A stretch of 63,445 nucleotides of DNA, filler included, from Bipalium vagum (taxonomy: Eukaryota): the NCBI GenBank assembly GCA_037834085.1. It is 3 parts of 3 records of this genome, joined end to end, with 100 filler letters (N's around TTAATTAATTAA, not from the genome) between each part and the next. Parts side by side here need not be neighbours in the genome. Positions count along the whole stretch, not along the records: positions 1 to 26,581 come from JBBMKC010140564.1; 2 more parts are not named here. One strand, 5' to 3'. How positions within the stretch are numbered: the first letter of the stretch is position 1; each line of letters opens with the position of its first letter. The notes below the pieces were generated by a model. That model saw only the letters and a list, made by a program, of their open reading frames with translations. It did not search any database and was not told the origin of the DNA. A program made the position numbers and the translations under genes. Shown piece after piece: positions 9,400 through 26,581 of this stretch.

Positions 9400-10059
9400 G
9401 AATTTAGTTGTAAATTAAAATTTTAATAATCTTCTCTATTGAAGAAAGATTATATATTATCTTAATAATATCTAAGTTTGAATCAATCAATTTATTAAGA
9501 CAAAAAAGAAGATTAGCAAAATTAAAAGAGACTGGGAGTGCTATTGATCTTTGAAAGTCTGGAAGACCATCAATTGAAGATAAAATATGCGAAATAAGTC
9601 AAATTTATTAAGAAAATTTTGAGACATTGCTAAGAACCTTTAAAACTGAACACAATATAGTAAGAAAAGTTCATCAACTTTATCCTCATAGGATCCAAAT
9701 TATCTATATGTTACATGATGGAGACTATATTGGAAAGATTGCAATGTGCGAAAGCCTAATTAATGAAATCAAAAATAATCCATCTTTTCCTCGAAAACTG
9801 ATTTTAACTGGTGAAGCAACCTTTTCCTAAAATGAATATGTCAACAACCAAAAGATATCCAAGACCTGCAATATTTATTAGGATATCATCAGAAATAAGA
9901 TAAGATGTTATTAACGACCTTTATAATCGCTTAAATAAGTGTACTAGACCAAAGGTCACTGCAGAAAAATACTAAATCGTAATAAATTAATGTTTTCTGT
10001 CGAATATATTTTACGGTATTAAATTTTAAAATCGGATTCTTACTTTTGAAACACCCTGC
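9400..10059 (+). mobile_element. Tc1/mariner-superfamily transposase relic with right TIR
   Basis: ORF 9627-9830 LYPHRIQIIYMLHDGD...NNPSFPRKLILTGEATF resembles HPYKIQ..QEL...D...F..IxFSDEATF; the element ends in CTTACTTTTGAAACACCCTG. Confidence 0.65.
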
Positions 10060-10333
10060 AGAATAACTGAATTAAAAAAATTTAAATTTGAAGCTCAAAA
10101 AATAATTTACTTTTTAAATAGGAAAGTACAATCTCCGTATTTATGTTCTATTCATTGTTCAATTGTAAGGTGACACCAACGTCTATTTATTTTCATGTCA
10201 TTACATTTATTCACAAAAATTTTTAATATTGATTTAATTTAGAAAAATTACACTATTTAATGTTTCGGTTCTGATTTAAGAACAGTGAGAATTCCGTAGA
10301 AATAATAACACTCAGACACGACTTTAATTAACT

Positions 10334-10339
10334 TTTATT
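10334..10339 (-). terminator. Polyadenylation signal of the neuropeptide gene
   Basis: AATAAA on the minus strand a few nt after the TAA stop; weak evidence in AT-rich DNA. Confidence 0.45.
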
Positions 10340-10343
10340 CAAT

Positions 10344-10777
10344 TTATATTCCGACAAACTTTGGGGCACCTTTCAACTGAACTCCGTTGGCTTTTCCAAT
10401 AATTTCTACATAACGTTTTGATTTTCCCACGAAACTATGAACGCGTTTGGCTGAACGCGGAGTGTCTGAATCATCTTTTGCTCTTCCAACAAAGTAAGGA
10501 GCCTCCTTTCCAACAAATTCTCGAATACGTTTCGCCCTTCCAACAAAGTAAGGGGCCTCCTTTCCAACAAATTCTCGAATACGTTTCGCCCTTCCAATAA
10601 TTTCTATGTAACGTTTCGCTTGAGCTTTGCATTCGTCAGAATCACAGTCCTCGTCAGATTCGTCATAAAAGCTTTGAACCGCAATGACCAAAGTAAACAA
10701 TGCGAAAAGAAAGAATAACTGAAACAATGAAACAGAGATAAGAAGAAAAATAAATACCATTGATATACCTTGTTCAT
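10344..10777 (-). CDS. Amidated neuropeptide precursor (PxFVamide / xREFVamide / YxEIIamide); exons 10777-10769 and 10718-10344
   Basis: ATG AAC AAG, then a 50-nt GT..AG intron (10768-10719), gives the signal peptide MNKLFFLFALFTLVIAVQS. It is followed by an acidic spacer and short peptides flanked by KR/K/R with Gly amide donors: YIEIIG, IREFVG x2, EAPYFVG x2, VHSFVG, YVEIIG, GAPKFVG. TATA box upstream and AATAAA just past the stop. Confidence 0.92.
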
Positions 10778-10816
10778 TTTGATGGTTGTGAATGTTTTTG
10801 GAGTAAGAGGTTTGGG

Positions 10817-10824
10817 TTTATATA
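10817..10824 (-). promoter_or_regulatory. TATA box of the neuropeptide gene
   Basis: TATATAAA on the minus strand about 40 nt upstream of the ATG at 10777. Confidence 0.6.
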
Positions 10825-11733
10825 GAGATTTGAGAAGGGCTCTAAATGGCCCAACGTAAATATTTGAGTGTTTGGACATTTTATTTATTTTTCATTAGCA
10901 CTTTGAATTGCCTAAAAAGCAATTGTCTTTTATTGACTTAGGAAAAGAGAATCTTGCTAGTCAATTTTACATGGTACAAATGTTAAGAAGAGTAAAAGTA
11001 AGAGGTTTTATAAATCGCAAATAAAATTTAATCTCTTCAAATTTGACTTATAAACCAGATTTGTGCTTTCATTTATAAATTGTAATGAAAATTTAGAACA
11101 AAAGAAAGTCATTTTATATTTTTGGAGGTTTCAAAAGTTTTATTTGGTTTTAATTCACTTTGTGACTTCTCAAGTGCTTCTCTGTCCTATCCCTATAATC
11201 AACATTTTAAACAAAAACCTGTACAAAATGTTGATAAATTCCGTCTTGTTTTATTATTTTTGGTTCTCCTTATCTTAAAACATTGATCTGACTTGTGCTA
11301 ATGAAAAATAAATTAAATTTCCAAATTGTGAAATTTATTTATTATTATTTTATTTGGATAATTTAAATCGCTTTTCAAATCATATATGTATGTGAACCCC
11401 AACTTCTTATTCTCAACCACCTAAATGAACAAGTAATCTCATTGATCCGAATTAATTTATTTCTAACTGTTTCAGCCATTCTTTTTACATCTTTTATTAG
11501 TTTACTAATTTGTTACAAAACTAGTTATAGTAAAATGGATAAAAAAGACCAACTCCCATTATCAATCTTCTGCTTTCTACATCATAAGATTTTGGAGGGG
11601 TGAATTTTTTGTTCATCAAGCTTAGTACTTCCACATATATTTTAAATAAAATTAATTAATATTAAATAAAAAAGCAGTAAATATTATTGGCTTATTTTAT
11701 ATTTAAATCAATATTTAACAATAATGAAAAATA

Positions 11734-17998: not shown

Positions 17999-19447
17999 AT
18001 GTGTTTTAATGAATCAAATAAATCATTTCTAAAGAATATCTTTTTTGATTATTACAATAACTCATTTATCGAAGTTTACAAATATTTTGTGAATATGGAA
18101 AATAGTAAAGAGTATGTTGATGGCGATGACTATGGCAAAGTCTTGGAAGCAAATTTAAAAATTCATGTAACAAATTTCTTTAAGACATTTTTCATTCATC
18201 ACGAAGGAGCAAGTGTAACCAGCTTGATCTCATTTAGTCTAAACGATCAGTCAAAGGATTACTTTGTAAAAGTAGATTTGACATCAACGAAAAATAAAAT
18301 TCTGACATCAAATAACTCTTATCAATCTGAAGTCGTCAGTGAGTCGTCTATCAAAGAAAACTACAAACCAGTCAATGTCATCAAAACTGAAATGGTTGAC
18401 AATCCCATCAACAATAAACTGTCAGCAAATCAAAAAAATTTTGACAACGAGTTCAAGAACATTTTTTTGTCCAACAACACATGTGATTTGAAAATAATTC
18501 CCAAGAGTGACAGAAGAAAATCCAAAAGACCTCAGCGAAAAATTATCGAAAACACCAACGAAACGTCTGACTTTATAGCCAAATCGAAGATTCAAAAGTT
18601 GATATATACCAATGTTAATTGCAGCAAAGTTATCGTCAAGTCCGAAGAAGCAGAAAACCATGAAAACTATGAAAACAGTAACAAGGATAAGCCGGACAAA
18701 GAGACTTCCAATTCCATAATAATAAGCAACGATCACAAGATCTTGCCCAGTATTCTTGCTCTTAATGGCATTTCCGGCGACAATAGCATCCTCATGTCTC
18801 CATCCAATGGTCTGACGATCCTCAGTCCCAATGCATACAACATTCTACGATCTGTCGGCTCACTGACGGTTGCAGCCCAATCGAATTCCATTCCGTTTCT
18901 GAACACGTGCGTCAATGTACCCGGCAACGCTACCCCGTCCAATGGAATGACCAAGAATAAGGGGCTGGTAATATCGTCCTCGAACATTGCCTCGATCTCC
19001 ATCAACCAGCCGATCTCTCAGGCCGTCTCCAATAACAATAACAATAACAACCTGTCTCTCATCTCCACTGATTCCAGCGCAGCCACTCCAGCCACGTCCA
19101 TCAGCACTGCCTCGACCCAGAACTCGTTGCGCGCCATCTCCACGATCACAACGTCGAGACAATCCGTTCCGTCCCAGGTGGTCCAAGCGCACAGCTCCAA
19201 GCTTTATAAATGTCGATATTGCTGCAAAACATTCAATCGCAAATTCTGCCGGGAGCGTCACGAACGATTGCACACGGGCATCAAGCCATACACCTGCGAA
19301 ATTTGCAACGACAAATTCATCAGGCTAGAGGACAAGAAACGCCACGTCCGATCGACCCACAACGGTCGTGACTCGTCGACAGAACTCAACAACGGGAGCT
19401 ATTTGTCGCGAAGCAATTCTCCGGAAACACCGTCAACGAAAATCTAG
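17999..19447 (+). CDS. Intronless C2H2 zinc-finger protein (two fingers); likely start at 18095 (MENSK) or 17999
   Basis: 482-aa ORF; YKCRYCCKTFNRKFCRERHERLH-TGIKP-YTCEICNDKFIRLEDKKRHVRSTH; S/N/T-rich low-complexity middle; basic RRKSKRPQRK NLS-like patch. Confidence 0.9.
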   Translation: MCFNESNKSFLKNIFFDYYNNSFIEVYKYFVNMENSKEYVDGDDYGKVLEANLKIHVTNFFKTFFIHHEGASVTSLISFSLNDQSKDYFVKVDLTSTKNKILTSNNSYQSEVVSESSIKENYKPVNVIKTEMVDNPINNKLSANQKNFDNEFKNIFLSNNTCDLKIIPKSDRRKSKRPQRKIIENTNETSDFIAKSKIQKLIYTNVNCSKVIVKSEEAENHENYENSNKDKPDKETSNSIIISNDHKILPSILALNGISGDNSILMSPSNGLTILSPNAYNILRSVGSLTVAAQSNSIPFLNTCVNVPGNATPSNGMTKNKGLVISSSNIASISINQPISQAVSNNNNNNNLSLISTDSSAATPATSISTASTQNSLRAISTITTSRQSVPSQVVQAHSSKLYKCRYCCKTFNRKFCRERHERLHTGIKPYTCEICNDKFIRLEDKKRHVRSTHNGRDSSTELNNGSYLSRSNSPETPSTKI

Positions 19448-22341: not shown

Positions 22342-25300
22342 TCACCAAACACAAGAAAAGGAGTCTCGTTCATTCCGGTACAGTGATGGATTCGTTAGAG
22401 GATATAGCAAAACAGTCCATCCAATTAGTCCGACAAAATAACAAAATATCAAAAGATATCGTATTCCACGATTCTCGTGCGTAAAAGCCTCGACGAAATT
22501 CGGGAATCCCATCGCATTACAGAAGGCGTGCACCACAATGGCGGACAAAATGTTTCCTGAAAAAAAGTTTGAAAAAATGAGTTCAGTTGGACAATTTATC
22601 TCAATTTCTAACACTACTCACAAATAGTTAGTAACATACCAACGTATAAAATAATAAAAAATCTTTCTCTCATTCGTCGTTGACATAATAAATAGCGATT
22701 AATATCAAATGAAATCTTTTCGAAGTCGTTATAAATTATCTGTAACGGTAAACAACATAAGTAACATCATTAATTACTTGTTAATATAAATAAATTTTAA
22801 ATTAAAGCTAATTTCACTTAAATAGATAAAAATATTTTAAAAATTATCAATATTAATTAAATTGTTATCAATAATTATTGGCTCAAAAATAAATATTGAT
22901 TAGTAAAAGTATTTTTAATAATAAATTATTGATTGATTAATATTTTTTAAATATCAATAGTTTAATTAAAAATTATGATGAATTAATAATTGATTACTAA
23001 AAAATTAATACTAGCTATTAATAATTTGATAAAAAATGATTATTGATTAATTTAGTGTAGAGAAGATAAAGTGAATTCGGTCTTTGTTCCCACTCATTTG
23101 ATTGAGGCTATTTTAAACAAAAATTATTCAATACTTGAGCACAGAAAGGAAGCTTTGTCTGACTTAAAATGTTCAAGTAAACGTTTTGATGAGTTCCTCT
23201 AACTCAATCTGTTTCTCTTTCCTTCGTTCCCTCTCTCTCTCTCGTCGTTTCAATGTACCTGTGAACCGAACGCTAATTCCAAACACGTGAACAGAGAGTC
23301 TTTATGTTTCACCAAGAAGAAACATAAAGGATCCCTGTCAAACTATTAATTCCGACTTTCGCTGTGACGGGAACCGGTAGTGAGACGAAAACGAAGCAAT
23401 TTCAACACACTACACAGACGGAGCCGGAAAATCACGTGATCACAATTTCTCATACTCTCAAAGATGACCGTGACACTCTGTGACTCACACGTCCATCTCC
23501 ATCGCCACTGTCCCATCACCGCTCTCGTCACTCAAGCTCAACACCATCGAGTTTTGCGATGAAGTGCACTTTGTTTTCCAGTGCTCATATAAACTGGTAA
23601 TTTCATAAAAATAATCCATCCGGCAAATCTTTCATATGCAAATCGATAAATAACGTTAAAAAGGATAATTTGAGCACATTTATATTCTTAATAAATCGAT
23701 TTTTTATTTATTCAATAAATTAATAATCAGCTCGAGATTTTTGTGTATCGATTTACAAAAAAGATTTCAATGATGCATTTGATAAATGAAAATTTGAGCA
23801 CATTTTAAAGAATCAATTTTTTTTATTAATAATTAATCAACAATTCATTCATTTTACGATATAAAATAATTGAATTAATACCAATTTCATTTAAGATGCT
23901 AACATAAAATAACATTCAAAATAAAATCGATAATTATTATAGAAATCAATAAAACAAGACAAAACGTGTGACTTAAAAAATAACTTTGAAAAAAGAATCA
24001 TTTTATTATTAAACCCCTAGTTTAATTTGTAAAATAAAATTATTTTTAAAGAAAAAAAAATCAGCTTTCAAATTATGACTGAAATTTAACTGTTATATAC
24101 TTTGAAGAAAAAGGAGCGAAAGAGAGCACCTACTAATCAATCACCAAAAATATGAAAAAAGATAATAGATACGATCTGGTATAATTATAACGAAAAATAT
24201 CGATTTCAGAAAAAATTTCATATTTCCTACTGGTTCAATAACTTTTTCACTATAATTCAGTTTTCTCATTAATTTTGTGATAATCGATAAATGTGCAAAT
24301 AAAAAAAAATAAAATTGTCTCCTAAATTCTAAAATTGAAAACAAATCGTCAGATCAGTTTTCGGTTTTTCAGAAGAATCAGAAAAAAATCAATTTCTTTA
24401 AGTGACCACAATTCGCCATTGTAATTTTTAACCAATCAAATTCAATTTTCGTTCTATATAACGCACACATAAAACTGAGAAATATTGAAATCAATTTGGT
24501 GACAGTTACCTGTTCTGAGAGTAAGGAAGCCGGAATAAATGCCGAAAATCGTCGTGTATGTCATCTGGAACACTGAAAAGAAAAAAACAATAGATTAATT
24601 TTTCCCGGATCCTGTTGTGATTGGCCATATAAAAATGAAGTTTTTACTGCACACAATCAGGGCATTGGAAAACGAGCTGCCTTCTCTCAACATTTCGATG
24701 ATGTGGTGTAAGTGAGCTGAAGATGAAAAGGATTACGGTCAAGTACGATTATCAGTCGAACGAAAATTTTTTACCGATTCCGAAAAAGATCGGTCCGATA
24801 AATATCGCCGTAACACATGACCATAATTTGCACAAATGAACGAGCAGAGCACTTCGGAAGATTATCTCTTCATTCAAAGGGGCAAAGAAAATATTTCTGG
24901 CCATATACAAATTCCATGGAGAGAGTATAATCGATTTTTTGAAATTGAAACGAAATTCTATCCATTACAATAAACCAGGACAGGGGGGATTCAAAGAGAG
25001 TACCTGTGATAAAGTACTGAATGATCGGTCCGAAAAACAATATCTGTTTAAAATAAGACGATATCGATTATCAATATACAATTGTTAATATGATCAAAAT
25101 AACCGTTACCGTGGTAATAAAAAGTGGAAGAATCAAAGACTCTATTACATTATCTAACCTGAAAAATAATTTTCTTAAAACTTCTCCATAGGAGCTCTAA
25201 AAGTTTATTAAATAATTTCCAGTCGATATAACTAACGTTTTTCATTGATAAAGTTTTCAAGTTTAATATTTCAAACAAAAGAATACACCCAGTAACGCTT

Positions 25301-25462
25301 GACATGGAAATTATCCTTCTCACTATTGTTTTCGGGTGATCTCTAAACTATGAAGTTAAGTTATATGGATATCATAACATACCTGGGTAGTTTCGTTGGA
25401 TAAATATAAAGTGAAGCTACACATATAATTGAATAGAAAAAACATAGAAATATGTCAAACAT
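22342..25462 (-). CDS. RCE1: CAAX prenyl protease 2; exons 25462-25383, 25342-25237, 25196-25110, 25043-25004, 24957-24775, 24716-24648, 24572-24510, 22556-22342
   Basis: All introns are GT-AG and phase-compatible. Spliced protein has SLYI..RDHP.TI.RR, RNIFFAPLNEEIIFRS, FFGIAHLHH, FQMTYTTIFG.YSGFL.LRTG and HAFCNAMGFP, the catalytic motifs of the Rce1/Abi family. Confidence 0.95.
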
Positions 25463-26581
25463 AAGTATTGAATTCGTTAAAAATTTTTTTGATAACAAAT
25501 TATTTATTTCAAGATTTTGAATCTTATCTTTTGTCACAATATATATAAACAAACCAAAATAATTCTAAATTACAATAAAATTTAGTATGAACACAAAAGT
25601 ATATAAAAATAAATTGATTTTCAACTATTAAGTGAATTATTAATAATACAATCTTATTTTTCAATATTCATATATATGATTTTATTAAAAAAATTTTAAT
25701 TTTAATACTCAGCAATTTAAATTAAAATTAATTATTCGTATAAAATATCTTAATACTTATCCAATTTTCTGATTGAATATTATTTTTCAGTAATTTTCTC
25801 TAAAAAGTACAATTAATGAAACTAAGATGTTTTAGTTTATTTATCAGCATAAATTCCAGTTCCTACTCAGGGCGACATTTCTCGCTTAGATAGGACCTAC
25901 ATTGTGCCAGAGTACAATATATAACAAGTGTAACTGGAATTTCCATGTCTACTCCTTGACATCAAAAGATTATTTGTAAATGATTATGATTTAAGCAAAA
26001 CCTTAAATCATTAAGACAAAATATGTCCGATTTGTCATCAACTTCATCATCTTTTTATTTAAAACAAACCTGAAGAGACTGTAGACCTCAGATATCATTA
26101 ATGCTTTATCGATAAGTGGGTGAGCACGAAAATGAGCTTTGTCACAAACAGCTATTTCAAAGCGACCATTTCACAATCAAGACCGCAAAAAAAATTTGAA
26201 GTATCTAGCTCTGTCACCATCTTTCTTTGGGTTATTGAGATCGTGTCTCTACAGTAATCACGACTATTTTTTCAATCCTTATTTATCCATATCTAAATCT
26301 ATATATTTTGATGTTGACTGTGAAGATTCCTTCATTGGTTAAGAACATTCAAGTATATATAAATCGGTTAACAAACTGAACAACTACTTTATACTCAAAA
26401 TATTTAGATTTTTAAAAGTTTCGTGATCTTTTATATCTGTTAAGTGTTTGGTTTTGGGTGATGATTGTTATTATGGTGGAGCGAGTAGTGCTGGTTTGTT
26501 TGTACTATCAATTAACTTCAGTTTCTAATTTACCTAACCAAACCTTAACACAAAGCTCGTTTCAAGTTCAGAAGGATTTAC

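What the first reader, a model, noticed from the sequence alone, without database searches (positions are those of the whole stretch)
10344..10777. Mosaic neuropeptide precursor combining PxFVamide, xREFVamide and unrecognised YxEIIamide peptides
Seen: after a signal peptide and acidic spacer, predicted products are YIEIIamide, IREFVamide x2, EAPYFVamide x2, VHSFVamide, YVEIIamide and a terminal GAPKFV(G). Established: PxFVamide is the Mytilus inhibitory peptide family (GAPMFVa/GSPMFVa type). From memory and to be verified, xREFVamide pentapeptides belong to the separate Aplysia PRQFVamide precursor. I do not recognise YxEIIamide. Inference: one short precursor alternating three peptide classes could be an ancestral or fused FVamide gene and an undescribed peptide signalling system. 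This is the best novelty candidate in the window.
Basis: partly seen in the sequence, partly recalled or inferred. Interest (0 to 1): 0.85.

Follow-up and report, generated by a model that had tools for sequence, protein, structure and literature searches.

The report
Flatworm FVamide-type neuropeptide precursor gene
This is an intact small gene for a secreted precursor of short amidated peptides, a compact flatworm member of the FVamide peptide family known from snails, bivalves and annelids; it is a modest evolutionary find, not a new signalling system.

Summary
On the minus strand there is a two-exon gene: ATG at 10777, a 50-nt GT..AG intron at 10768-10719, and stop at 10346-10344. It encodes a 127-aa prepropeptide with a signal peptide, an acidic two-Cys spacer and seven Gly-ended units flanked by basic residues: YIEII, IREFV x2, EAPYFV x2, VHSFV and YVEII.

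A search of 1.84 billion protein representatives gave 51 hits, with a best E-value of 7e-18. Nearly all are multi-copy FV/FLamide precursors. They include named gastropod PRQFVamide precursors, nine hits carrying exact IREFVG, and a named MIP-related precursor carrying exact EAPYFVG. Shuffle controls show that the peptide cores drive the match, not the cleavage punctuation.

At least five further copies lie elsewhere in the genome. Copies differ by 5-6 synonymous and 0 non-synonymous changes over 66 codons, apart from a variable second-peptide slot.

The one marker tested, a mortalin gene on another contig, is closest to Dugesia japonica (89%), so the host looks like a planarian.

YxEIIamide has no exact match. 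It most resembles fulicin/fulyal-type [FY]xEF[ILV]amides, which share a gene with MIP peptides in oyster and annelids.

No RNA or peptide data were available. The verdict is a new member of a known kind, of moderate interest.

The parts
10233..10947 (-). Duplicated gene unit (promoter, both exons, intron, 3' end) shared with a paralogue on contig C85841
   Evidence: Homology to L002 is limited to this 715-nt stretch at 88% identity. Flanks beyond it do not align, so these are dispersed paralogues and not alleles.
10817..10824 (-). TATA box (TATATAAA), 47 nt upstream of the ATG
   Evidence: Read directly from the sequence. It is conserved in L002 and as TATTTAAA in L042.
10769..10777 (-). Exon 1 coding part: ATG AAC AAG (MNK)
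   Evidence: It is identical in L002 and reads ATGAATAAG in L042.
10719..10768 (-). 50-nt GT..AG intron; contains an in-frame ATG at 10760 that could serve if the intron were not spliced out
   Evidence: It is 12% diverged from L002, against about 3% for the adjacent exon. In L042 the interior is unrelated and carries stops while both splice sites are kept.
10671..10718 (-). Rest of the signal peptide (hydrophobic core, then A-V-Q-S with predicted cleavage after Ser)
   Evidence: Kyte-Doolittle 9-residue means reach 2.98, then fall below -1. Small residues at -1 and -3 are seen directly.
10611..10670 (-). Acidic spacer with two Cys, ending in KR
   Evidence: It is identical at the protein level in L002, L003 and L004.
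10593..10610 (-). YIEII-Gly unit (predicted YIEIIamide)
   Evidence: The unit is YIEII in L002 and L003 and YVEII in L004.
10485..10592 (-). Two tandem 18-aa units, each RAKR, IREFV-Gly, K, EAPYFV-Gly
   Evidence: TRF finds period 54, 2.3 copies, 95% identity. Exact IREFVG occurs in nine homologues and exact EAPYFVG in P0005.
10443..10484 (-). 14-aa spacer ending in KR
   Evidence: It is absent from L002 and L003, which carry further IREFV/EAPYFV units here.
10425..10442 (-). VHSFV-Gly unit (predicted VHSFVamide)
   Evidence: The degenerate copy L005 reads VHSL at this place.
10395..10412 (-). YVEII-Gly unit (predicted YVEIIamide), preceded by KSKR
   Evidence: The degenerate copy L005 reads CVEFI-Gly here.
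10344..10394 (-). K, then a 15-aa C-terminal tail ending in GAPKFVGI, then TAA
   Evidence: The tail is conserved in L002 and L003. No basic residue follows the Gly.
10334..10339 (-). AATAAA polyadenylation signal, 5 nt after the stop codon
   Evidence: It is conserved in L002.

Best explanation
An intact, selectively maintained two-exon gene encodes a 127-aa secreted prepropeptide of the spiralian FV/FLamide superfamily (the PRQFVamide, MIP and fulicin group). The host is an AT-rich genome that looks like a planarian flatworm.

Inferred mechanism:
1. The signal peptide is removed after A-V-Q-S.
2. Prohormone convertases cut at KR, RAKR and KSKR, and probably at the single Lys after IREFV-Gly and YVEII-Gly.
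3. A carboxypeptidase trims the basic residues.
4. Peptidylglycine amidating monooxygenase converts each C-terminal Gly into an amide.

This gives IREFVamide x2, EAPYFVamide x2, YIEIIamide, YVEIIamide and VHSFVamide. These then act on G-protein-coupled receptors as neuromodulators, most likely of muscle or cilia as in molluscs and annelids.

Shown here: the ORF, the gene structure, the homology, purifying selection and the gene family. Inferred: transcription, the cleavage pattern, amidation, the neuronal site and the receptors.
For: - Gene anatomy: TATA box, ATG, a 50-nt GT..AG intron and AATAAA, all conserved in paralogue L002. The splice sites are also conserved in L042, whose intron interior is unrelated.
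- Homology: 51 hits at E<=1e-3, best 7e-18. Named ones include Prqfvamide 1 of Deroceras, PRQFVamide of Biomphalaria and Plakobranchus, and MIP-related peptides-like of Gigantopelta.
- Exact peptide matches: IREFVG in nine hits, EAPYFVG in P0005, and a mosaic xRDFV + PPxFV arrangement in P0007.
- Controls: shuffled queries score 0 bits. Core-shuffled queries with the cleavage punctuation kept score at most 25.5 bits, against 65-81 bits for the real query.
- Selection: window vs L002 shows 6 synonymous and 0 non-synonymous changes. Window vs L003 shows 5 and 0. Against L004 the 13 non-synonymous changes are confined to the EAPYFV slots plus one I-to-V in YxEII.
- Family: about six coding copies sit on different contigs.
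- Processing capacity: the genome encodes Cu2_monoox_C and proprotein-convertase P domains. PC2 is needed for peptide processing in planarians, and cuts after a single Lys were seen there by mass spectrometry.
- FVamide immunoreactivity occurs in flatworm neurons.
- Host: the mortalin ORF is 89% identical to Dugesia japonica, against 83% or less for other named taxa.
Against: - There is no transcript or peptide evidence. The only run that holds the locus is DNA-like contigs carrying the unspliced intron.
- No FVamide-type gene is among the 51 S. mediterranea prohormones or in their MS tables.
- No orthologue of similar length was found in 5.8 billion proteins.
- Cleavage at the single Lys is assumed. 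The unit could instead remain a 13-residue amide.
- The flatworm assignment rests on one marker from another contig, and the assembly holds three divergent COX1 types.
- The 5' module is shared with a gene for a cationic Cys-rich peptide. That would suit gland-secreted products as well.
Confidence: 0.72

Rival explanations
1. The same gene, but its products are exocrine. On this reading they are gland-secreted peptides aimed at prey or enemies, mimicking the muscle-inhibiting or feeding-circuit peptides of molluscs and annelids, and not endogenous neuropeptides.
For: - IREFVG and EAPYFVG are letter-for-letter identical to gastropod peptides.
- The family is multi-copy, with one slot changing fast: EAPYFV to DAPVFL or GERVIL, carrying nearly all of the 13 non-synonymous changes.
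- Promoter, exon 1, splice sites and signal peptide are shared with a gene for a Lys/Cys-rich peptide, as in toxin superfamilies.
- The gene is absent from the S. mediterranea prohormone list.
Against: - The architecture is that of ordinary neuropeptide precursors.
- FVamide-type peptides are endogenous across spiralians, and FVamide immunoreactivity is neuronal in a flatworm.
- Identity over five or six residues can arise from shared ancestry and receptor constraint.
- Only three loci carry the 5' module, so there is no large toxin-like radiation.
- The species and its diet are unknown.
Confidence: 0.08
2. The same gene, processed differently. The single Lys between IREFV-Gly and EAPYFV-Gly is not cut, so the main product of each RAKR-flanked unit is one 13-residue amide, with IREFVGK as an invariant N-terminal half and a variable C-terminal half.
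For: - Only the outer sites are furin-like RAKR; the inner site is a lone Lys.
- The unit of duplication is the whole 18-aa block.
- Across paralogues the N-terminal half is invariant while the C-terminal half varies.
Against: - In all nine homologues with IREFVG, the Gly is followed by a cleavage site and the pentapeptide stands alone.
- Gly-Lys is a common amidation and cleavage signal.
- Cuts after a single Lys were seen by MS in planarian prohormones.
- YVEII-Gly-Lys uses the same punctuation.
Confidence: 0.15
3. The contig is not from the flatworm but from another organism in the sample, for example mollusc prey or a commensal. On this reading the gene is an ordinary FVamide gene of that organism.
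For: - The assembly holds three COX1 types only 68-81% identical to one another, and contigs of differing GC content.
- All named homologues are gastropod proteins.
Against: - The window has 28.9% GC, in line with the 24% GC flanks of the Dugesia-like mortalin contig.
- At 26.6 kb it is long for an assembly averaging 1.6 kb per contig.
- The precursor is 3-4 times shorter than the mollusc ones and uses RAKR and single-Lys punctuation that they lack.
- Copies lie on six contigs of similar composition.
Confidence: 0.04
4. It is a silent or decaying gene copy, or a chance ORF.
For: No RNA evidence is available. One family member, L005, is degenerate with stops and a frameshift.
Against: - The frame is intact, and promoter, splice and poly(A) signals are conserved.
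- There are 0 non-synonymous against 5-6 synonymous changes between copies.
- The similarity to precursors in other phyla is highly significant.
Confidence: 0.03

Closest known systems
Gastropod PRQFVamide precursors (first described in Aplysia, from memory; here Biomphalaria, Deroceras, Plakobranchus and Lymnaea proteins P0004, P0002, P0014, P0017)
   Same: Signal peptide followed by repeated xR[QED]FV-Gly-basic pentapeptide units. IREFVG itself occurs in P0004, P0008, P0010, P0012, P0017 and P0034, and 8-14 times in P0009, P0016 and P0026. phmmer E-values run from 1e-14 to 1e-15.
   Different: The gastropod proteins are 380-550 aa with 10-20 copies, KR on both sides and acidic spacers between units. 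The window gene is 127 aa with two copies. Each copy is fused through a single Lys to a PxFV peptide, and the outer sites are RAKR. There is no PRQFV copy.
Mytilus inhibitory peptide (MIP, PxFV/Iamide) precursors, e.g. 'MIP-related peptides-like' of Gigantopelta aegis (P0005)
   Same: xAPYFV-Gly hexapeptides, with exact EAPYFVG in P0005 (E 2e-14).
   Different: MIP precursors carry about 20 PxFV copies and no xREFV or YxEII units. Here there are two copies, and that slot is replaced by DAPVFL or GERVIL in paralogues.
Oyster MIP/fulicin gene (LOC105328755) and the annelid FVa/EFLGa gene
   Same: One gene gives both PxFV-type and E-[FL]-[FLV]amide-type peptides. The window gene likewise joins PxFV with xxE[FI][VI] peptides.
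   Different: In oyster the classes are separated by alternative splicing, and in Platynereis by a stop codon that is read through. Here they alternate inside one short ORF, and nothing peptide-like follows the stop.
Unnamed mosaic precursor P0007 (533 aa, from an ENA assembly)
   Same: It alternates LRDFV-Gly with APPSFV-Gly or APPGFV-Gly, the same pairing of an xR[DE]FV peptide with a PxFV peptide.
   Different: It has KR between all units, is four times longer and lacks a YxEII-type unit. Its organism is unknown.
Fulicin and fulyal of Achatina (FNEFVamide and YAEFLamide, sequences from memory) and fulicin-like precursors P0013, P0029, P0040, P0046, P0050
   Same: Amidated pentapeptides with an aromatic first residue and Glu at position 3. 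KR-FNEFV-G, KR-YTEFI-G, KR-YSEFL-G and KR-YVEFL-G are seen in the hits. YIEII and YVEII have the same length and the same Tyr and Glu positions.
   Different: Position 4 is Ile and not Phe, so the published core E-[L/F]-[L/F/V] is not met. No exact EII-Gly unit occurs in any true hit. Whether a D-residue is present at position 2 is unknown.

Membership tests
Spiralian FV/FLamide precursor superfamily (PRQFVamide / MIP / fulicin-FVa group) | N-terminal signal peptide followed by several short peptides, each ending in Gly plus basic residue(s) | tested here: met
   Seven such units follow a hydrophobic leader.
Spiralian FV/FLamide precursor superfamily (PRQFVamide / MIP / fulicin-FVa group) | Sequence similarity to named members that goes beyond shared cleavage punctuation | tested here: met
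   E-values from 7e-18 to 1e-14 for the top hits. Core-shuffled controls score at most 25.5 bits, against 65-81 bits.
PRQFVamide family | Repeated xR[QED]FV-Gly pentapeptide units | tested here: met
   IREFVG occurs twice in the window and up to four times in L002. It is exact in nine homologues.
PRQFVamide family | Peptides present in amidated form in neurons | not testable with these tools
   No RNA run or peptidome of this organism was available.
MIP (PxFV/Iamide) family | Hexapeptides x-x-Pro-x-Phe-Val/Ile followed by Gly | tested here: met
   EAPYFVG occurs twice and is exact in the Gigantopelta MIP-related protein.
Fulicin / EFLGa (protostome TRH-type) peptides | Core E-[L/F]-[L/F/V] before the amide (as stated in PMC8398477) | tested here: inconclusive
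   IREFV fits (E-F-V). YIEII and YVEII do not (E-I-I). The degenerate copy L005 has CVEFI at the same slot.
Fulicin / EFLGa (protostome TRH-type) peptides | Activation of a TRH-receptor orthologue; D-amino acid at position 2 | not testable with these tools
   This needs a receptor assay and chiral analysis.
Enterin family | Longer peptides ending in HSFVamide (motif recalled from memory); reported as mollusc-specific | tested here: not met
   VHSFV shares only the last four residues. No enterin-type protein and no HSFVG unit is among the 51 hits. The family is listed as restricted to molluscs.

The most novel reading that the evidence does not exclude
The peptides are not the worm's own neuropeptides. 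On this reading they are secreted mimics of prey neuropeptides: a predatory flatworm releasing exact copies of gastropod IREFVamide and MIP-type EAPYFVamide to relax or quiet its prey. Three observations fit but do not show it. The gene family is small, dispersed and fast-varying at one slot. Its secretion cassette is shared with a cationic Cys-rich peptide gene. And it is absent from the S. mediterranea prohormone catalogue.
Probability: 0.06. Interest if true: 0.8.

Novelty: new member of a known kind. Interest (0 to 1): 0.36.

Why it matters
In gastropods PRQFVamide, MIP and fulicin sit on separate genes. In oyster and annelids MIP/FVa and fulicin/EFLGa peptides share one gene. A flatworm precursor that carries all these peptide types, plus an HSFV end, in one 127-aa ORF supports a common origin for these spiralian families. 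It also extends them to a phylum whose best-studied peptidome lists none. It yields five short synthetic ligands for planarian receptor deorphanisation, including a test of whether E-F-V and E-I-I amides act on TRH-type receptors. The gain is incremental: the family, two of the exact peptides and the mosaic arrangement were already known elsewhere.

Tried and rejected
- Pfam on the ORF: no family.
- Word-indexed search of 5.8 billion proteins with exon 2: nothing at E<=0.01. That tool only sees proteins of 0.55-1.75 times the query length.
- Literature strings IREFVG, APYFVG, YIEIIG, YVEIIG, EFVamide and EIIamide: no paper.
- Expression: the single run found holds the locus only as DNA-like contigs with the intron present, so neither transcription nor splicing could be tested.
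- Nematode origin: the SL1 pattern is absent.
- S. mediterranea identity: a published npy-6 primer has no match within two mismatches. This is weak, because the assembly is fragmented.
- Exact-protein look-ups for window ORFs: none on record.
- Sample accessions of hits and of the closest mortalin relative appear in no paper.
- Species identification through COX1: the 209-aa piece of L011 hit only unnamed metagenomic COX1 at 88% identity or less.
- McVeigh 2009 could not be read. It therefore stays open which platyhelminth FVamides Conzelmann and Jekely 2012 had in mind.
- ESM Atlas was busy.
- Rfam: no match in the window. The bacterial-type promoter and terminator scan is irrelevant here.
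- Searches of the genome with mollusc MIP (P0005) and fulicin-like (P0040) proteins returned this same family as the best matches and no long canonical precursor. In so fragmented an assembly this is not proof of absence.
- The joined (spliced) protein was never sent to a search tool. Searches used exon 2 by reference. The three-residue exon 1 was added only in a local hydropathy calculation.

Full report
**1. What is there**

Between 10344 and 10777 the minus strand carries a small gene.
- A TATA box (TATATAAA, 10824-10817) lies 47 nt upstream of an ATG at 10777 in an AAAATGA context.
- ATG AAC AAG is followed by GT at 10768. Fifty bases later the sequence tgtttcAG ends at 10719.
- The frame then runs from 10718 to a TAA at 10346-10344. 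AATAAA follows 5 nt later (10339-10334).
- Without splicing, an in-frame ATG at 10760 would give a 138-aa ORF that also starts hydrophobically. The sequence alone therefore allows both models.

The spliced product has 127 aa. Its parts are:
- MNK plus a 13-residue hydrophobic core and A-V-Q-S. Hydropathy means reach 2.98 and then fall below -1.
- An 18-aa acidic spacer with two Cys, then KR.
- YIEII-G, RAKR, IREFV-G, K, EAPYFV-G, RAKR, IREFV-G, K, EAPYFV-G.
- A 14-aa spacer ending in KR.
- VHSFV-G, KSKR, YVEII-G, K, and a 15-aa tail ending in GAPKFVGI.

The two IREFV/EAPYFV blocks form a 54-nt tandem repeat, 2.3 copies at 95% identity. The joined protein was not sent to any search tool. Exon 2 (window:10347-10718:-) was used by reference.

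**2. Is the gene real?**

*Gene family.* The genome is 440.8 Mb in 272,664 contigs. It holds further copies on C85841, C227064, C184938 and C222094, and a degenerate one with stops on C256043. C85841 aligns with the window only over 10233-10947, and the flanks are unrelated. These are therefore dispersed paralogues that keep promoter, intron and poly(A) signal, and are neither alleles nor retrocopies.

*Conserved signals.* In the alignment with C85841 the TATA box, ATGAACAAG, both splice sites and AATAAA are kept. The intron is 12% diverged, against about 3% in the adjacent exon.

*Purifying selection.* Over 66 codons the window differs from L002 by 6 synonymous and 0 non-synonymous changes, and from L003 by 5 and 0. 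Against L004 there are 13 non-synonymous changes. All fall in the two EAPYFV slots (now GERVIL and DAPVFL) except one I-to-V in YxEII. IREFV, the spacer and every cleavage site stay identical.

*Support for the intron.* A third gene on C248821 (L042) shares the TATA-like box, ATGAATAAG, GTAT and TTTCGTTGTTTCAG, and the first 30 nt of exon 2. Its intron interior is unrelated and full of stop codons. Only the spliced reading works there. This is the best available support for the intron in the window gene.

*Missing evidence.* Direct evidence of transcription is lacking. The single public run that holds the locus consists of DNA-like contigs that run unspliced through the intron.

**3. What it is related to**

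Pfam gave nothing, and so did the word-indexed protein search. The full HMMER scan of 1.84 billion representatives gave 51 proteins at E<=1e-3 and 15 at E<=1e-10, with a best of 7e-18. Apart from four obvious false positives (P0020, P0027, P0035, P0044), all are multi-copy amidated-peptide precursors of 120-630 aa.

Named members:
- Prqfvamide 1 of Deroceras reticulatum
- PRQFVamide of Biomphalaria glabrata and B. pfeifferi
- prqfv-amide of Plakobranchus
- an unnamed Lymnaea protein
- 'MIP-related peptides-like' of Gigantopelta aegis

Exact and near matches:
- IREFVG occurs in nine hits, and 8-14 times in P0009, P0016 and P0026.
- EAPYFVG occurs in the Gigantopelta MIP-related protein.
- P0007 alternates LRDFV-G with APPSFV-G, the same pairing as in the window.

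Other hit classes are ARMFV, MRYFV (the scallop 'LRNFVamide' type), AKYFL (the Platynereis FLamide peptide), SEFL, and fulicin-like proteins.

Controls: shuffled queries scored 0 bits against these 51 proteins. Queries with the Gly-basic punctuation kept but the peptide cores shuffled scored at most 25.5 bits, against 65-81 bits for the real query. The peptide cores carry the signal.

**4. YxEIIamide**

No true hit contains EII-Gly, and no paper holds the strings. The closest shapes are in the fulicin-like proteins:
- P0013 (Candidula), P0029, P0040 and P0046 have KR-FNEFV-G, KR-FSEFV-G, KR-YSEFL-G, KR-YTEFI-G and KR-YAEFI-G beside many PYEFV or PYEFL copies.
- P0050 (123 aa) has YVEFL-G and YAEFL-G.

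From memory, fulicin is FNEFVamide and fulyal is YAEFLamide, both with a D-residue at position 2. The degenerate paralogue L005 reads CVEFI-G where the window has YVEII-G. F and I therefore interchange at position 4 within this very family.

I read YxEIIamide as a divergent fulicin/fulyal-type peptide and not a separate system. This rests on resemblance. The published core E-[L/F]-[L/F/V] is not strictly met.

**5. The 'mosaic'**

The literature already joins these classes.
- Conzelmann 2013: annelid FVa and FLa precursors are related to mollusc fulicins, and the Platynereis FVa mRNA carries EFLGa peptides behind a stop codon.
- Realis-Doyelle 2021: one oyster gene yields two MIP (PxFV/Iamide) precursors and a fulicin precursor by alternative splicing. 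The short MIP form had been annotated as PRQFV. EFLGa/fulicin peptides are treated as protostome TRH-type ligands.
- De Oliveira 2019: PRQFVamide and MIP are found across lophotrochozoans, and enterin only in molluscs.

The window gene fits as a compact version in which the classes alternate within a single ORF. That agrees with a common origin but does not prove that this arrangement is ancestral. VHSFV shares only its HSFV end with enterins (motif from memory), and no enterin was hit.

**6. Whose genome**

- GC is 28.9%.
- A nematode SL1 pattern is absent.
- An intronless mortalin gene on C136370 has flanks of 24% GC. It is 89% identical to Dugesia japonica mortalin and 93% identical to an unnamed Logan protein. 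All other named taxa score 83% or less. A triclad planarian or close kin is therefore likely.
- A published S. mediterranea primer has no match (weak evidence).

Caveats: the assembly holds three COX1 types that are only 68-81% identical. One of them could not be identified. The marker is not on the window's contig.

The 26.6-kb window is long for an assembly averaging 1.6 kb per contig. Its composition matches the flatworm-like contigs. Its precursor differs in size and punctuation from every mollusc hit. I therefore give contamination about 4%.

**7. Known in planarians?**

The 51 S. mediterranea prohormones of Collins 2010, including the sequence and MS tables, contain no FV-Gly, EFV-Gly, YFV-Gly or peptide EII-Gly unit. 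The family table has no FVamide class. Two later planarian peptide papers also mention none.

FVamide immunoreactivity does occur in Echinococcus neurons. McVeigh 2009 could not be read.

Searching this genome with mollusc MIP and fulicin-like proteins returns this family as the best match and no long canonical precursor. The gene is thus probably undescribed for planarians, but I cannot exclude an entry in resources I could not reach.

**8. How it most likely works**

The steps below are inferred from the sequence punctuation and from established prohormone biochemistry.
1. The signal peptide is cleaved after A-V-Q-S.
2. Convertases cut at KR, RAKR and KSKR, and at the single Lys after Gly.
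3. A carboxypeptidase removes the basic residues.
4. Amidation uses the Gly.

Supporting facts:
- The genome encodes copper monooxygenase and convertase P domains.
- PC2 knock-down alters planarian peptide profiles.
- Peptides cut after a single Lys were seen by MS.

Whether IREFV-G-K-EAPYFV-G is cut in the middle is open. I give about 15% to the 13-mer being the main product.

By analogy with MIPs (inhibition of muscle contraction) and FVa neurons that project to ciliary bands, a role in modulating muscle or cilia is the best guess. The receptors are unknown.

**9. A rival worth noting**

Several features would also suit exocrine, prey-directed mimic peptides:
- the shared secretion cassette with the Lys/Cys-rich peptide gene L042
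- the fast-changing second slot
- letter-perfect identity with gastropod peptides
- absence from the S. mediterranea catalogue

Only three loci carry the cassette, and nothing shows gland expression. I give this rival 6-8%.

**10. Verdict**

This is a new, compact, probably flatworm member of the known FV/FLamide precursor superfamily, not a new signalling system. Its interest is moderate: an evolutionary link between MIP, PRQFVamide and fulicin types, plus a small set of testable ligands.

Noticed in passing
L042 (G000:C248821) 480-790, + strand: This gene shares the TATA-like box, exon 1 (MNK), both splice sites and the signal-peptide start with the window gene. It encodes an unrelated 42-aa Lys-rich mature peptide with six Cys, including two C-x3-C pairs. 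The only Pfam match is a sub-threshold Moricin hit (E 0.026). It looks like a shared secretion cassette.
   Followed up: partly
L029 (G000:C164842) 1-232, - strand: A 232-nt contig of 42% GC encodes tandem NGGFI-Gly-Arg-Arg units. This is another candidate amidated-peptide precursor fragment, unrelated to the FVamide family. Its organism is uncertain.
   Followed up: no
L005/L008 (G000:C256043) about 120-480: A degenerate family member, 74-80% identical to the window gene, with a frameshift and stops. It keeps the VHS.. and xVEFI units, so the window-type architecture is older than the copies that carry only IREFV/EAPYFV units.
   Followed up: partly
window 22345-25564, - strand: Exons of a CAAX prenyl protease (Rce1-like) gene. 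ORF pieces at 25364-25564, 25153-25347, 24755-24964 (E-E-x-x-x-R motif) and 22345-22617 (H-x-x-x-N motif) were recognised by eye. Pfam did not call the last exon.
   Followed up: no
window 17999-19447, + strand: A single-exon 482-aa ORF with two C-terminal C2H2 zinc fingers (below Pfam cut-offs) and an Asn run. Locally GC rises to 39.5%.
   Followed up: no
window 9612-10050: A mariner-like transposase remnant (ORF 9612-9827). Next to it is a high-copy repeat, with contig depth in run X1 reaching the thousands and many loose ends. It lies just downstream of the peptide gene.
   Followed up: no
L009, L010, L011 (G000:C253947, C246471, C253320): Three different COX1 sequences, only 68-81% identical at the protein level, plus several decayed copies. 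Either more than one animal is in the sample or there are old nuclear copies. L011 matched only unnamed metagenomic COX1 at 88% identity or less.
   Followed up: partly
G000, many contigs: At least ten full-length HSP70 genes have no stop inside the match, so they are apparently intronless. One (L020) has 43% GC and may be foreign.
   Followed up: no
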